Below are positions 9,801 to 12,279 of a stretch of DNA of 64,000 nt, in pieces. The notes under the pieces are model-generated. The model was not told the DNA's origin. It did not search any database and saw only the letters and a list, made by a program, of their open reading frames with translations. The translations under genes and the position numbers were made by a program. The stretch is from sequence record MF498774.1. One strand, written 5' to 3'. Positions within the stretch are counted from its first letter, which is position 1. Each line of letters begins with the position of its first letter.

Positions 9801-10050
9801 TATGAATTTTTTAGAATCAGAAAAAGTAACTTGGGGTGGAAGAATATACCCGCTAGATATAGCAAACCAAATATGTTCTGTTCAGCCTATAGACCCTGAG
9901 CCATTTCGAAAACTATATGAGCGGGCTAAAGAGAACGAACGTATTAAGAATCGGCTTTCTAAAGCTTTTATGGTCCCTGTATCAAGGATCGACGCATACT
10001 GTGTAGAAGCATATCGACTTGGTATAAAAGAAAGTAAAAATAAAAGTTAA
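9790..10050 (+). CDS. Hypothetical protein
   Basis: ORF overlapping the upstream stop. Confidence 0.55.
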   Translation: MRNDMNFLESEKVTWGGRIYPLDIANQICSVQPIDPEPFRKLYERAKENERIKNRLSKAFMVPVSRIDAYCVEAYRLGIKESKNKS

Positions 10051-10087
10051 ACATACTTTCTAACTGTGATATGATGTTTATATAAAT
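10039..10087 (+). promoter_or_regulatory. Sigma70-type promoter for tRNA-Leu(TAA)
   Basis: GTTAAACA...TGATATGAT; near-identical copy at 11198-11246. Confidence 0.75.
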
Positions 10088-11202: not shown

Positions 11203-11246
11203 AAGTTAAACATCCTTTCTAACTGTGATATGATGTTTATATAAAT
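11198..11246 (+). promoter_or_regulatory. Sigma70-type promoter for the main tRNA run
   Basis: One mismatch versus 10039-10087; ends 2 nt before tRNA-Arg. Confidence 0.75.
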
Positions 11247-11247
11247 T

Positions 11248-11324
11248 GCGCTGTTAGCTCAGTTGGATAGAGCAACGTTCTTCTAAAGCGTGGGTCACTG
11301 GTTCGAATCCAGTACGGCGCACCA
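11248..11324 (+). tRNA. tRNA-Arg(TCT)
   Basis: Cloverleaf, loop CTTCTAA, encoded CCA. Confidence 0.95.
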
Positions 11325-11408
11325 CGGGATGTGGTGAAATTGGCAGACACACTAGATTTAGGTTCTAGCGCCATAGGCGTGACGGTTCGAGTCCGTCCAT
11401 CCCGACCA
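11325..11408 (+). tRNA. tRNA-Leu(TAG)
   Basis: CTAGA-TTTAGGT-TCTAG anticodon arm, encoded CCA. Confidence 0.95.
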
Positions 11409-11409
11409 A

Positions 11410-11485
11410 GCGGGTAAGGTGTTTATGGATACATGCAAGCCTTCCAAGTTTGAGTAGACCGGATCGTTACCGGCTACCCGCTCCA
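11410..11485 (+). tRNA. Atypical tRNA-Gly(TCC)
   Basis: 76-nt cloverleaf, loop CTTCCAA, encoded CCA; A8, U14, T-loop ATCGTTA. Confidence 0.85.
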
Positions 11486-11569: not shown

Positions 11570-11646
11570 GGCCCCTTAGCTCAGTTGGTTAGAGCAACCG
11601 ACTCATAATCGGTTGGTCACTGGTTCGAGTCCAGTAGGGGCCACCA
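11570..11646 (+). tRNA. tRNA-Ile2(CAT), ileX-like
   Basis: GGCCCCT acceptor stem and body like enterobacterial ileX; loop CTCATAA. Confidence 0.9.
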
Positions 11647-12027: not shown

Positions 12028-12105
12028 AGCGGGGTGGAGAAGTCAGGAGTTCTCGCCAGACTCATTATCTGGAAATCGGTGGTTCAAATCCACCTCCCGC
12101 TTCCA
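12028..12105 (+). tRNA. tRNA-Met(CAT), initiator-like body
   Basis: AGCGGGGTGGAG start like fMet; CCAGA-CTCATTA-TCTGG arm; encoded CCA; CCTAAATA at 12016-12023. Confidence 0.9.
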
Positions 12106-12188: not shown

Positions 12189-12279
12189 GGATGTTCGGCT
12201 ACGATGGCGGTGTAGCGGCGGACTGTAAATCCGTTCCCTCTGGGTAAACAAGTTGGTTCGAATCCAACAGCATCCACCA
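12189..12279 (+). tRNA. tRNA-Tyr(GTA)
   Basis: GCGGA-CTGTAAA-TCCGT arm, long variable arm, encoded CCA. Confidence 0.93.

What the first reader, a model, noticed from the sequence alone, without database searches (positions are those of the whole stretch)
11410..11485. tRNA-Gly(TCC) with inverted tertiary pairs
Seen by numbering the 76-nt cloverleaf: A8/U14 instead of U8/A14; A54/U58 instead of T54/A58 (T-loop ATCGTTA); U15/G48 instead of purine15/pyrimidine48; U21; and an A49-C65 mismatch. G18G19, the acceptor stem, U73 and CCA are intact. Established: U8-A14 and T54-A58 are near-invariant, the 49-65 region tunes EF-Tu binding, and staphylococcal non-ribosomal tRNA-Gly species deviate in these regions. 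Inference: coordinated swaps argue against decay. It may evade host modification or nucleases, or donate Gly outside the ribosome.
Basis: partly seen in the sequence, partly recalled or inferred. Interest (0 to 1): 0.7.

Follow-up and report, generated by a model that had tools for sequence, protein, structure and literature searches.

The report
Phage glycine tRNA with rewired core
This is a real, conserved glycine tRNA gene of an Aeromonas phage whose internal folding contacts use "mirror-image" base pairs; the same design recurs in many unrelated phages, showing that pairs thought near-invariant in tRNA can be replaced as a set.

Summary
The window is a T4-like Aeromonas phage (100% identical to AS-yj/AsSzw2). 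Rfam's tRNA model does not report it at all.

It is not decay. I found 72 distinct relatives at 135 public loci: Aeromonas phages of four genera, Xanthomonas phage Kintu, and many environmental phage contigs.
- A8/U14 never varies.
- All four stems keep pairing, and three of them show two-sided compensatory changes.
- The bacterial glycine identity set (G1-C72, C2-G71, U73, C35, C36) is kept.
- Tertiary pairs covary: G18/U55 alternates with A18/G55 without exception, and 54/58 alternates among A-U, U-A, C-A and others.

"G48" always pairs with C65, and "A49" is a bulged extra base. The Levitt pair is therefore U15-A, a swap of the canonical A15-U48 form.

The same core also occurs in phage tRNA-Asp, Lys, His and Thr.

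Most likely it is an ordinary translational tRNA, reading GGA/GGG for an AT-rich phage, built on an alternative core scaffold that circulates among phages. Evasion of host enzymes is possible but untested. A non-ribosomal role is unsupported.

The parts
11410..11485 (+). tRNA-Gly(UCC) gene, 76 nt, CCA encoded
   Evidence: ARAGORN. It is 100% identical in CC2-like Aeromonas phages, where two annotated records call it tRNA-Gly. There are 72 distinct relatives.
11417..11417 (+). A8, the partner of U14 (canonical tRNAs have U8)
   Evidence: A8/U14 occurs in 72 of 72 relatives, and in all tRNA-like matches of a scan that left 8 and 14 free.
11423..11424 (+). U14 and U15 (canonical tRNAs have A14 and a purine at 15)
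   Evidence: U14 in 72/72 and U15 in 71/72, though position 15 was fixed by two of the three search patterns.
11427..11428 (+). G18 G19, the D-loop partners of U55 and C56
   Evidence: G19-C56 in 72/72. Pair 18/55 is G/U in 59 and A/G in 13, with no exception.
11430..11430 (+). U21 (canonical tRNAs have A21)
   Evidence: Positions 21/22/46 covary: U,A,U in 68 and C,G,G in 4. Across other phage tRNAs, a non-A base at 21 accompanies A8/U14.
11441..11447 (+). Anticodon loop CUUCCAA: C32, U33, anticodon UCC at 11443-11445, A37, A38
   Evidence: U33, U34, C35, C36 and A37 are invariant in 72/72; C32 in 71/72.
11456..11456 (+). A at the end of the variable loop; it plays the structural role of position 48 and pairs with U15
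   Evidence: Alignment column 47 is A in 72/72, and U15 with this A forms a standard pair type in 71/72.
11457..11457 (+).
   Evidence: Column 48 pairs with 65 in 72/72 (GC 65, CG 3, AU 2, UA 1, GU 1). RNAalifold predicts the same pair.
11458..11458 (+).
   Evidence: It never pairs with 65 (0/53) and is absent from the 19 relatives that are 75 nt long.
11463..11469 (+). T loop ATCGTTA: A54, U55, C56, G57, U58, U59, A60
   Evidence: In relatives 54/58 is A-U 37, U-A 15, C-A 13, C-G 2, G-G 2, C-C 2 and A-A 1.
11482..11485 (+). Discriminator U73 and 3' CCA
   Evidence: U73 in 71/72. U73 is a bacterial glycine identity element (PMC9976931).
11207..11234 (+). Promoter-like site (TAAACA, 16 nt, TATGAT, with TG) just upstream of tRNA-Arg; context only
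   Evidence: The same motif lies at 10048-10075, before tRNA-Leu(UAA). This is a consensus match only.
11248..11408 (+). tRNA-Arg(UCU) 11248-11324 and tRNA-Leu(UAG) 11325-11408, abutting the tRNA-Gly with 0-nt and 1-nt spacers; probably one precursor
11570..11646 (+). tRNA(CAU), the next gene downstream on the same strand

Best explanation
It is a working elongator tRNA-Gly(UCC) of a T4-like Aeromonas phage.

How it most likely works:
- It is transcribed with tRNA-Arg and tRNA-Leu as one precursor and cut out by host RNase P (inferred).
- It is charged by the host glycyl-tRNA synthetase through an intact bacterial glycine identity set (elements shown, charging inferred).
- It is used on the ribosome to read GGA/GGG. 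These codons are common in this 38.6% G+C phage and are expected to be rare in its G+C-rich host (host composition is from general knowledge).

What is unusual is the L-shape core, which is held by an alternative but self-consistent set of tertiary contacts:
- A8-U14 instead of U8-A14.
- U15-A48 instead of purine15-pyrimidine48.
- A pyrimidine at 21.
- A U46-A22-U13 layer.
- A T-loop closing pair (54/58) that is free to be A-U, U-A, C-A and others.
- One bulged base after the first T-stem pair.

This core is an inherited scaffold that circulates among unrelated phages. Within phages it also serves other amino-acid specificities. In tRNA clusters it replaces the canonical tRNA-Gly as a cassette. 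Why phages keep it (neutral lock-in or an advantage) is not established.
For: Shown by tools:
1. ARAGORN cloverleaf.
2. 72 distinct relatives at 135 loci. They come from Aeromonas phages of Ceceduovirus, Ishigurovirus, Tulanevirus and Biquartavirus, from Xanthomonas phage Kintu, and from environmental phage contigs of about 4 to 354 kb. One of those contigs has a terminase 44% identical to PAK_P5-like Pseudomonas phages.
3. Structure is conserved. 96.6% of pair cells form standard pairs, against 87.6% in shuffles and 30-44% in slid controls. Eleven pairs show two-sided changes. RNAalifold recovers the acceptor, D and bulged T stems.
4. Tertiary covariation. 18/55 is G/U in 59 and A/G in 13, with no mixed state and at least 5 switches on a rough tree. 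54/58 switches about 27 times, as often as stem pairs. 21/22/46 covary.
5. Identity elements are kept: G1-C72 72/72, C2-G71 72/72, U73 71/72, C35 and C36 72/72 (element list from PMC9976931).
6. Phage 65 carries a canonical tRNA-Gly(UCC) in the same Arg-Leu-[Gly]-Met slot, between nearly identical flanking tRNAs. The two forms look interchangeable.
7. Spacers to the upstream tRNAs are 0 and 1 nt, all genes encode CCA, and a promoter-like site lies upstream.
8. GGA plus GGG make up 31% of glycine codons in 64 window ORFs. The cluster's other tRNAs mostly read A-ending codons.
9. The same core occurs in other isoacceptors, for example the unannotated tRNA-Asp of Ralstonia phage RSP15.
Against: - There is no expression, processing, charging or decoding data for this tRNA.
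- The single-sequence minimum-energy fold is not a cloverleaf, and its energy is unremarkable (z = -1.2).
- Rfam's tRNA model rejects the gene.
- An engineered A14U/U8A swap in a cellular tRNA-Leu did not restore activity (PMC6614811). A8-U14 is therefore not automatically tolerated.
- Conservation figures for positions 4-25 and 56-76 are inflated, because my search patterns fixed many of those bases.
- A bulge inside the T-stem segment that binds EF-Tu could weaken delivery to the ribosome.
Confidence: 0.75

Rival explanations
1. Same tRNA, but the rewired core is kept because it hides the tRNA from host proteins that read the canonical core or elbow. These could be body-modifying enzymes (s4U8, m5U54, pseudouridine-55, m7G46, acp3U47, dihydrouridine enzymes) or tRNA-directed defence nucleases. 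On this view the phage tRNA keeps working when host tRNAs are attacked or when modification capacity is limiting.
For: - The window tRNA lacks the usual target bases: A8, A16, A20, U46, A47 and A54 (target positions are general knowledge).
- A review reports s4U8 and acp3U47 on a T4-like vibriophage tRNA, so host enzymes do act on canonical phage tRNAs (PMC13191261).
- Variation concentrates at 54, 55 and 58, which are modification sites.
- Swapped pairs are common in phage tRNAs: A54/U58 in 57 and A8/U14 in 31 of 913 unique non-family tRNAs. They were absent from the few well-formed elongator tRNAs seen in random bacterial loci.
- Defence systems that destroy host tRNA exist, for example Retron-Eco7 (abstract of PMC12673091).
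Against: - Only one of the ten tRNAs in this phage has the A8/U14 and A54/U58 swaps. A general escape strategy would be expected to affect more.
- 54/58 changes at about the same rate as neutral stem pairs.
- Both 54/58 states occur in phages of the same host species.
- No nuclease or enzyme that discriminates these cores is known to me or was found in the literature searches.
Confidence: 0.2
2. A tRNA-like RNA whose main job is not decoding. It could be a processing signal that releases the neighbouring tRNA-Leu, or a decoy or sponge for a host factor that binds tRNA-Gly.
For: - The 1-nt spacing to tRNA-Leu means cleavage at its 5' end also nearly makes the tRNA-Leu 3' end.
- The D-arm half is far more conserved than a simple stem needs: about 87% of family members found through the 3'-half pattern carry the same 17-mer.
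- U73 and G71, the elements named for TacT acetylation of Gly-tRNA-Gly, are kept (PMC9976931).
Against: - The anticodon UCC, U33, A37 and the full glycine identity set are invariant across 72 relatives while the anticodon stem changes freely by compensation. That is the pattern of a decoding tRNA.
- In other phages the gene sits next to different neighbours with longer spacers.
Confidence: 0.05
3. A non-ribosomal glycine donor, like the staphylococcal non-proteogenic tRNA-Gly used for cell-wall bridges.
For: - It is a UCC glycine tRNA with an odd D/T region.
- 13 of 72 relatives (not the window copy) have G55, as the staphylococcal species do.
Against: - Defining features were tested and not met: G19-C56 is invariant, the first T-stem pairs are G/C-rich rather than A49-U65/A51-U63, and A8 replaces U8.
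- The same core serves Asp, Lys, His and Thr tRNAs.
- The immediate neighbouring ORFs have no Pfam match, so no transferase is evident.
- The staphylococcal lineage is reported only in staphylococci (PMC7826273).
Confidence: 0.03
4. A decaying tRNA pseudogene whose odd bases are accumulated damage.
For: - Rfam's tRNA model does not report it.
- One relative (Aszh-1, an UNVERIFIED_ORG record) differs from the window copy by one deletion and one substitution and is no longer called by ARAGORN.
Against: - The family has 72 distinct sequences at 135 loci, with 96.6% of pair cells paired, two-sided compensatory changes in the acceptor, anticodon and T stems, and an invariant anticodon and identity set.
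- Joint changes occur at tertiary pairs.
Confidence: 0.02

Closest known systems
Canonical phage tRNA-Gly(UCC), e.g. Aeromonas phage 65 (L002:1777-1852) and the tRNA-Gly of PAK_P-like Pseudomonas phages
   Same: - Same anticodon, the same glycine identity elements and a nearly identical acceptor stem.
- Same slot in the tRNA cluster (Arg-Leu-Gly-Met), with encoded CCA.
- Presumably the same job.
   Different: - Phage 65 has U8/A14, A21, a purine at 15, U54/A58, and a regular 5-bp T stem.
- Its sequence matches tRNAs in 581 phage records. The window's form has full-length matches in only 38 records of the same collection.
Staphylococcal non-proteogenic tRNA-Gly (NP1-NP3)
   Same: - Glycine tRNAs with a UCC anticodon and deviant D and T regions.
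- G55 in place of U55 is shared with a minority of the family (13/72), though not with the window copy.
   Different: - The NP tRNAs keep U8 (as s4U8), lack G19, and have weak A-U pairs at 49-65 and 51-63.
- They bind EF-Tu poorly, serve Fem transferases, and are confined to staphylococci (PMC7826273).
- None of these features holds here.
Phage tRNAs that survive host tRNA-cleaving defences (known to me: variant tRNA-Lys and tRNA-Tyr of phage T5; anticodon-loop variants in mycobacteriophages)
   Same: - A phage-encoded tRNA that differs from the host's version at positions a host protein could read.
   Different: - In those cases the differences lie in or near the anticodon loop, and a cognate nuclease is known.
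- Here the anticodon loop is ordinary, the changes are in the tertiary core, and no nuclease is known.
- The T5 and mycobacteriophage cases are recalled from memory, not tested here.
tRNAs with non-canonical cores (mammalian mitochondrial tRNAs; eukaryotic initiator tRNA with A54/A60)
   Same: - They depart from the 'universal' tertiary nucleotides while still forming an L-shape (PMC2777451 abstract). The initiator tRNA case is from general knowledge.
   Different: - Mitochondrial tRNAs mostly lose contacts and shrink their loops.
- This family keeps normal loop sizes and replaces contacts one for one, with covariation.
Engineered A14U/U8A double mutant of Streptomyces tRNA-Leu
   Same: - The same A8-U14 swap.
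   Different: - In a canonical background the swap left 1-8% of leucylation efficiency and gave no complementation in vivo (PMC6614811).
- In the phage family the swap is fixed, and it comes together with U15-A48 and a non-A base at 21.

Membership tests
Class I elongator tRNA (cloverleaf) | 7-bp acceptor stem, 4-bp D stem, 5-bp anticodon stem with a 7-nt loop and U33, 5-bp T stem with a 7-nt loop, 3' CCA | tested here: met
   ARAGORN and pair counts on 72 relatives. The T stem has 5 pairs only if 'position 48' pairs with 65 and one base is bulged.
Class I elongator tRNA (canonical tertiary core) | U8-A14 reverse-Hoogsteen pair with A21 | tested here: not met
   A8, U14 and U21. A8/U14 in 72/72 relatives.
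Class I elongator tRNA (canonical tertiary core) | Purine 15 - pyrimidine 48 Levitt pair | tested here: not met
   U15 with A at the structural position 48 (71/72).
Class I elongator tRNA (canonical tertiary core) | U54-A58 closing the T loop | tested here: not met
   A54/U58 in the window. Only 15 of 72 relatives have U-A.
Class I elongator tRNA (canonical tertiary core) | Elbow pairs G18-U55 and G19-C56 | tested here: met
   Both present in the window. G19-C56 in 72/72; 18/55 is G/U or A/G only.
Rfam RF00005 (tRNA) | Score at or above the gathering threshold of 29 bits | tested here: not met
   Not listed at the gathering threshold, at E<=10 on 3.4 kb, or at E<=10 on 96 nt.
Bacterial tRNA-Gly (substrate of bacterial GlyRS) | G1-C72, C2-G71, U73, C35, C36 (PMC9976931) | tested here: met
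   All present in the window. Kept in 72, 72, 71, 72 and 72 of 72 relatives.
Bacterial tRNA-Gly (substrate of bacterial GlyRS) | Actual glycylation | not testable with these tools
   No biochemical or tRNA-sequencing data were available.
Staphylococcal non-proteogenic tRNA-Gly | Loss of G19 (U/D19) and a UGC/UGU T loop (G55) | tested here: not met
   The window has G19 and U55. G19 is invariant in the family; G55 occurs in 13/72, always with A18.
Staphylococcal non-proteogenic tRNA-Gly | Weak EF-Tu-binding pairs A49-U65, U50-A64, A51-U63 | tested here: not met
   The window has G-C65, C50-G64 and C51-G63. Family counts are; the feature list is from PMC7826273. The effect of the bulged A on EF-Tu is unknown.
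Staphylococcal non-proteogenic tRNA-Gly | Partner Fem-type aminoacyl-tRNA transferase | not tested
   Only six ORFs next to the cluster were scanned against Pfam, with no match. The rest of the window was not scanned.
Phage tRNAs that escape anticodon nucleases | Anticodon-loop difference from the host isoacceptor, and a cognate host nuclease | not tested
The loop CUUCCAA is ordinary.

The most novel reading that the evidence does not exclude
Phages carry a second, self-consistent architecture for the tRNA core: A8-U14, pyrimidine15-A48, a non-A base at 21, A18-G55 as an alternative to G18-U55, and a free 54/58 closing pair. Several isoacceptors share it, and it moves between unrelated phages as gene cassettes. 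On the most novel reading it is selected because it makes these tRNAs unreadable to host proteins that recognise the canonical core, namely modification enzymes or tRNA-directed defence nucleases. They are already unreadable to standard covariance-model annotation.
Probability: 0.2. Interest if true: 0.85.

Novelty: new variant of a known kind. Interest (0 to 1): 0.62.

Why it matters
U8-A14, purine15-pyrimidine48, G18-pseudouridine55 and T54-A58 are textbook near-invariants of tRNA. It has been hard to tell whether they are fixed by folding or by the many proteins that read them.

This family is a natural experiment. Swapped or substituted versions are fixed and covary, while the tRNA keeps everything needed for charging and decoding. 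That points to recognition and history, not folding alone, as what holds the canonical pairs in cells. It also gives concrete sequences for structural and modification studies.

There is a practical consequence as well. Rfam's tRNA model misses these genes, and they are left unannotated in records that annotate other tRNAs (Xanthomonas phage Kintu, Aeromonas phage 31, Ralstonia phage RSP15). Counts of phage tRNAs, and codon-usage arguments built on them, are therefore biased.

Tried and rejected
- **Rfam at three settings** did not report the gene. I take this as a limit of the model, not as evidence against a tRNA.
- **Single-sequence folding** gave a non-cloverleaf minimum with an ordinary energy. 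This is uninformative for a tRNA. It did, however, pair G48 with C65 and bulge A49.
- **Bacterial-genome scan.** Absence from bacteria is therefore not shown. Blastn found nothing in 5,426 E. coli genomes and only partial matches to ordinary tRNA-Gly in 72,556 plasmids.
- **Literature.** Searches for A8-U14, A54-U58, A18-G55, U15-A48 and for phage tRNA with T-loop terms found no tRNA paper. The library covers open-access papers only.
- **Standard numbering rejected.** The A49-C65 mismatch and U15-G48 reading does not survive comparison.
- **Host adaptation of 54/58 rejected.** Both states occur in A. salmonicida phages.
- **Not done.** I did not build a covariance model or scan the whole window's proteins for transferases.
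- **Alignment caveat.** MAFFT misplaces the gap for the four Kintu-type sequences in the anticodon arm. This lowers the paired share of helix 27-31/39-43.
Full report
**What the window is, and the observation**

The tRNA region of the window is 100% identical to Aeromonas phages AS-yj and AsSzw2. It is 97% identical to vB_AdhaM_G2 and AP1, which are CC2-like T4-type phages of about 230 kb. ARAGORN finds ten tRNA genes on the + strand between 10090 and 12863. In the annotated relative the cluster lies between the tail and baseplate genes, dNMP kinase and a tail-fibre chaperone on one side, and thymidine kinase and lysozyme on the other.

The gene at 11410-11485 is called tRNA-Gly(tcc).
- A8, U14, U15, G18 G19 and U21.
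- G48, and A49 opposite C65.
- T loop ATCGTTA, giving A54 and U58.
- U73 and an encoded CCA.

The other nine tRNAs of the cluster all have U54/A58, and eight of the nine have U8/A14. Rfam's tRNA model finds eight of the ten genes. It does not list this one at its gathering score, at E<=10 on 3.4 kb, or at E<=10 on a 96-nt slice.

**Close relatives**

Blastn against 50,697 phage records finds the full-length gene in 38 records. Thirty-seven are Aeromonas phages and one is Xanthomonas phage Kintu. I fetched copies from five lineages and aligned them.
- The Ishigurovirus phage ZPAH1 has two two-sided compensatory changes in the anticodon stem.
- Tulanevirus phages (phiAS4, Aes012) and Biquartavirus phages (44RR2.8t, 31) keep A8, U14, U15 and U21. 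Their T loop, however, is TTCGATA, so 54/58 is U..A where the window has A..U. That is a double change at one tertiary pair.
- Both forms occur in phages of Aeromonas salmonicida.
- Kintu's copy is 76% identical and unannotated, and lies between tRNA-Trp and tRNA-Arg. It has A8, U14, U15 and A54/U58. It also has A18 with G55.
- Phage 65 carries a fully canonical tRNA-Gly(UCC) in the same Arg-Leu-[Gly]-Met slot. Its flanking tRNAs are nearly identical to the window's, while the segment between them is unrelated. That looks like a cassette replacement.

**A large family**

I ran three pattern scans of public collections.
- A 5'-half 17-mer against viral contigs.
- A 3'-half pattern against viral contigs that left the 5' half free.
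- A D-arm pattern against metagenomes with N at positions 8 and 14.

Parsing the results with a script gave 72 distinct family sequences at 135 loci: 55 IMG/VR contigs, 72 metagenome contigs, 7 isolate records and the window. Some viral and metagenome records are the same contig.

With positions 8 and 14 left free, every tRNA-like match had A8/U14. That was 82 distinct strings at 130 loci, and the only other two matches were non-tRNA chance hits.

The carrier contigs range from about 4 kb to 354 kb. They encode terminase, portal, tail-fibre and ligase genes. One terminase is 44% identical to those of PAK_P5-like Pseudomonas phages, and isolates of that group carry a canonical tRNA-Gly.

One caveat applies to the conservation figures. 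The patterns fixed many bases in positions 4-25 and 56-76, so conservation there is overstated. About 87% of family members found through the 3' pattern alone also carry the exact 5' 17-mer. The D-arm conservation is therefore largely real.

**Secondary structure, and a correction**

On the 72-sequence alignment, 96.6% of pair cells form standard pairs. Shuffles give 87.6%, and controls with slid partners give 30-44%. Eleven pairs show two-sided changes.

The two readings of the T arm differ sharply.
- In the standard reading, 49-65 pairs in 0 of 53 sequences.
- In the alternative reading, the base numbered 48 pairs with 65 in 72 of 72 sequences: GC 65, CG 3, AU 2, UA 1, GU 1.
- The 19 members that are 75 nt long simply lack base 49.
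- RNAalifold independently predicts the 48-65 pair with 49 bulged.

So the window tRNA has three features:
- A 4-nt variable loop ending in A (11456).
- A first T-stem pair G(11457)-C65(11474).
- One bulged A (11458).

The Levitt pair is then U15-A in 71 of 72 sequences. This is the swap of the canonical A15-U48 form, not a U-G pair.

**Tertiary covariation**

| Positions | States observed in 72 sequences | Switches on a rough tree |
|---|---|---|
| 18/55 | G/U 59, A/G 13, no mixed state | at least 5 |
| 19/56 | G-C 72 | none |
| 21/22/46 | U,A,U 68; C,G,G 4 | 2 |
| 54/58 | A-U 37, U-A 15, C-A 13, C-G 2, G-G 2, C-C 2, A-A 1 | about 27 |

The 54/58 switching rate is as high as that of freely compensating stem pairs. 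By my reading every observed 54/58 combination could form a trans Watson-Crick/Hoogsteen pair, but I did not test this. The T-loop closing pair therefore looks unconstrained in identity.

**Signs of function**

- The bacterial glycine identity set is G1-C72, C2-G71, U73, C35 and C36 (PMC9976931). It is present in the window and kept in 72, 72, 71, 72 and 72 of 72 relatives.
- U33, the anticodon and A37 are invariant, and C32 is present in 71 of 72.
- Position 32 governs whether an unmodified UCC anticodon can read all four glycine codons (PMC7826273). That C is the permissive base is from my own knowledge.
- tRNA-Arg, tRNA-Leu and tRNA-Gly abut with 0-nt and 1-nt spacers, and each encodes CCA. 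A promoter-like site lies at 11207-11234, and the same motif precedes tRNA-Leu(UAA). That is a consensus match only.
- The window is 38.6% G+C. In 64 ORFs, GGA plus GGG make up 31% of glycine codons.
- The cluster's tRNAs mostly read A-ending codons. This fits codon supplementation in a G+C-rich host. The host's composition is from general knowledge.

**The same core in other tRNAs**

ARAGORN over all fetched phage loci gave 913 unique non-family tRNAs with standard geometry.
- 31 have A8/U14 and 57 have A54/U58.
- 13 have both. That is 42% of the A8/U14 set, against 4% of the U8/A14 set.
- A8/U14 occurs in tRNA-Asp, Lys, Thr, His, Trp and Ala.
- A8/U14 comes with a non-A base at 21: A21 in 4 of 31, against 506 of 618 in canonical tRNAs. 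Position 48 is mostly A. A purine15-pyrimidine48 pair occurs in only 2 of 31, against 510 of 618.
- G55 comes with AG rather than GG in the D loop in 9 of 10 tRNAs. Of 941 tRNAs with U55, 909 have GG.
- Ralstonia phage RSP15 (Ackermannviridae) has an unannotated tRNA-Asp with the same D arm, the same T loop and the same bulged T stem.
- The few well-formed elongator tRNAs in random bacterial loci were canonical at these positions.
- The family was not found in 5,426 E. coli genomes or 72,556 plasmids.

This sample of phage loci is biased, because I fetched them for carrying the family.

**What it most likely is**

It is a working translational tRNA-Gly(UCC) built on an alternative core scaffold that circulates among phages.
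- Shown: conservation, covariation, identity elements, and cassette-like exchange with the canonical form.
- Inferred: co-transcription, RNase P processing, charging, and decoding of GGA/GGG.

The stacked layers 8-14 and 15-48 are both mirrored, so the purines sit on the position-8 and position-48 side. This may explain why the swaps come as a set (inference). It may also explain why a lone A14U/U8A swap failed in a cellular tRNA-Leu (PMC6614811).

Homing-endonuclease genes sit next to the gene in two relatives.
- Aes012 has a SegE-like GIY-YIG gene, just above Pfam's cutoff.
- ZPAH1 has an HNH gene, with a weak match.

They suggest a route for cassette spread (inference).

**Rivals**

- **Evasion of host enzymes or nucleases** remains possible. 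The window tRNA lacks U8, U16, U20, G46, U47 and U54, which are usual modification targets. Host enzymes do place s4U8 and acp3U47 on a canonical phage tRNA (PMC13191261). Against it, only one of the ten tRNAs in this phage has these swaps, 54/58 evolves like a neutral pair, and no discriminating protein is known.
- **A non-ribosomal role** fails the defining features of the staphylococcal species.
- **Decay** is very unlikely given the comparative data. One relative only (Aszh-1, an unverified record) has one deletion and one substitution and is no longer called by ARAGORN.

**Novelty**

Full-text searches of about 8.4 million open papers and preprints found no tRNA paper that mentions A8-U14, A54-U58, A18-G55 or U15-A48. 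The subscription literature was not searched. I rate this as a new variant of a known kind.

Noticed in passing
window 12189-12279 (+): tRNA-Tyr(GTA), 91 nt with a long variable arm, is also missed by Rfam's tRNA model. Its best match is tRNA-Sec at 31.4 bits, below the cutoff of 47. By simple indexing it has C at positions 8 and 14.
   Followed up: partly
window 11248-11485 (+): tRNA-Arg, tRNA-Leu and tRNA-Gly are packed with 0-nt and 1-nt spacers, and all ten tRNAs of the cluster encode their CCA.
   Followed up: partly
window 10048-10075 and 11207-11234 (+): The same promoter-like motif (TAAACA, 16 nt, TATGAT with an upstream TG) sits just before tRNA-Leu(UAA) and just before tRNA-Arg. Other promoter-like sites precede the tRNAs at 12028 and 12788. 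The total number of sites is not above the shuffles.
   Followed up: no
L322:4001-4076 (Ralstonia phage RSP15, LC121084.1): An unannotated tRNA-Asp(GTC) has the same alternative core: A8, U14, U15, T loop ATCGTTA and a bulged T stem. ARAGORN also calls Glu, Cys and Val tRNAs there that the record lacks.
   Followed up: partly
L005:2501-2575 (Xanthomonas phage Kintu, PP313117.1); L009:2501-2576 (Aeromonas phage 31): Family tRNA-Gly genes are left unannotated in records that annotate their neighbouring tRNAs with tRNAscan-SE.
   Followed up: yes
L004:2414-2489 (Aeromonas phage Aes012): The tRNA-His next to the family tRNA-Gly has a canonical U8/A14 but a T loop ATCATCC, which gives A54/U58.
   Followed up: no
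L004:2696-3289; L007:2035-2394: Homing-endonuclease genes lie next to the family tRNA-Gly in two relatives. Aes012 has a SegE-like GIY-YIG gene (26 bits against a cutoff of 25). ZPAH1 has an HNH gene (a weak match, with the record's own annotation). These are a possible vehicle for cassette exchange.
   Followed up: partly
L002:1855-1930 (Aeromonas phage 65): A tRNA-like gene with a 6-nt anticodon loop (ARAGORN 'tRNA-???') directly follows the canonical tRNA-Gly. It has no counterpart in the window.
   Followed up: no
L092, L315, L035, L059 and other environmental phage loci: In some phage contigs 35-47% of the tRNAs depart from U8/A14 or U54/A58. Whole tRNA sets, not just single genes, can be non-canonical. 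ARAGORN false positives were not excluded.
   Followed up: partly
L082:5251-5325: A tRNA-Gly(UCC) has the family's acceptor stem and bulged T arm (A54, G55, U58) but a different D arm with U8/A14. This looks like a mosaic of the two core types.
   Followed up: no
L284 (metagenome contig): A family-type tRNA-Gly carries the anticodon CCC instead of UCC.
   Followed up: no
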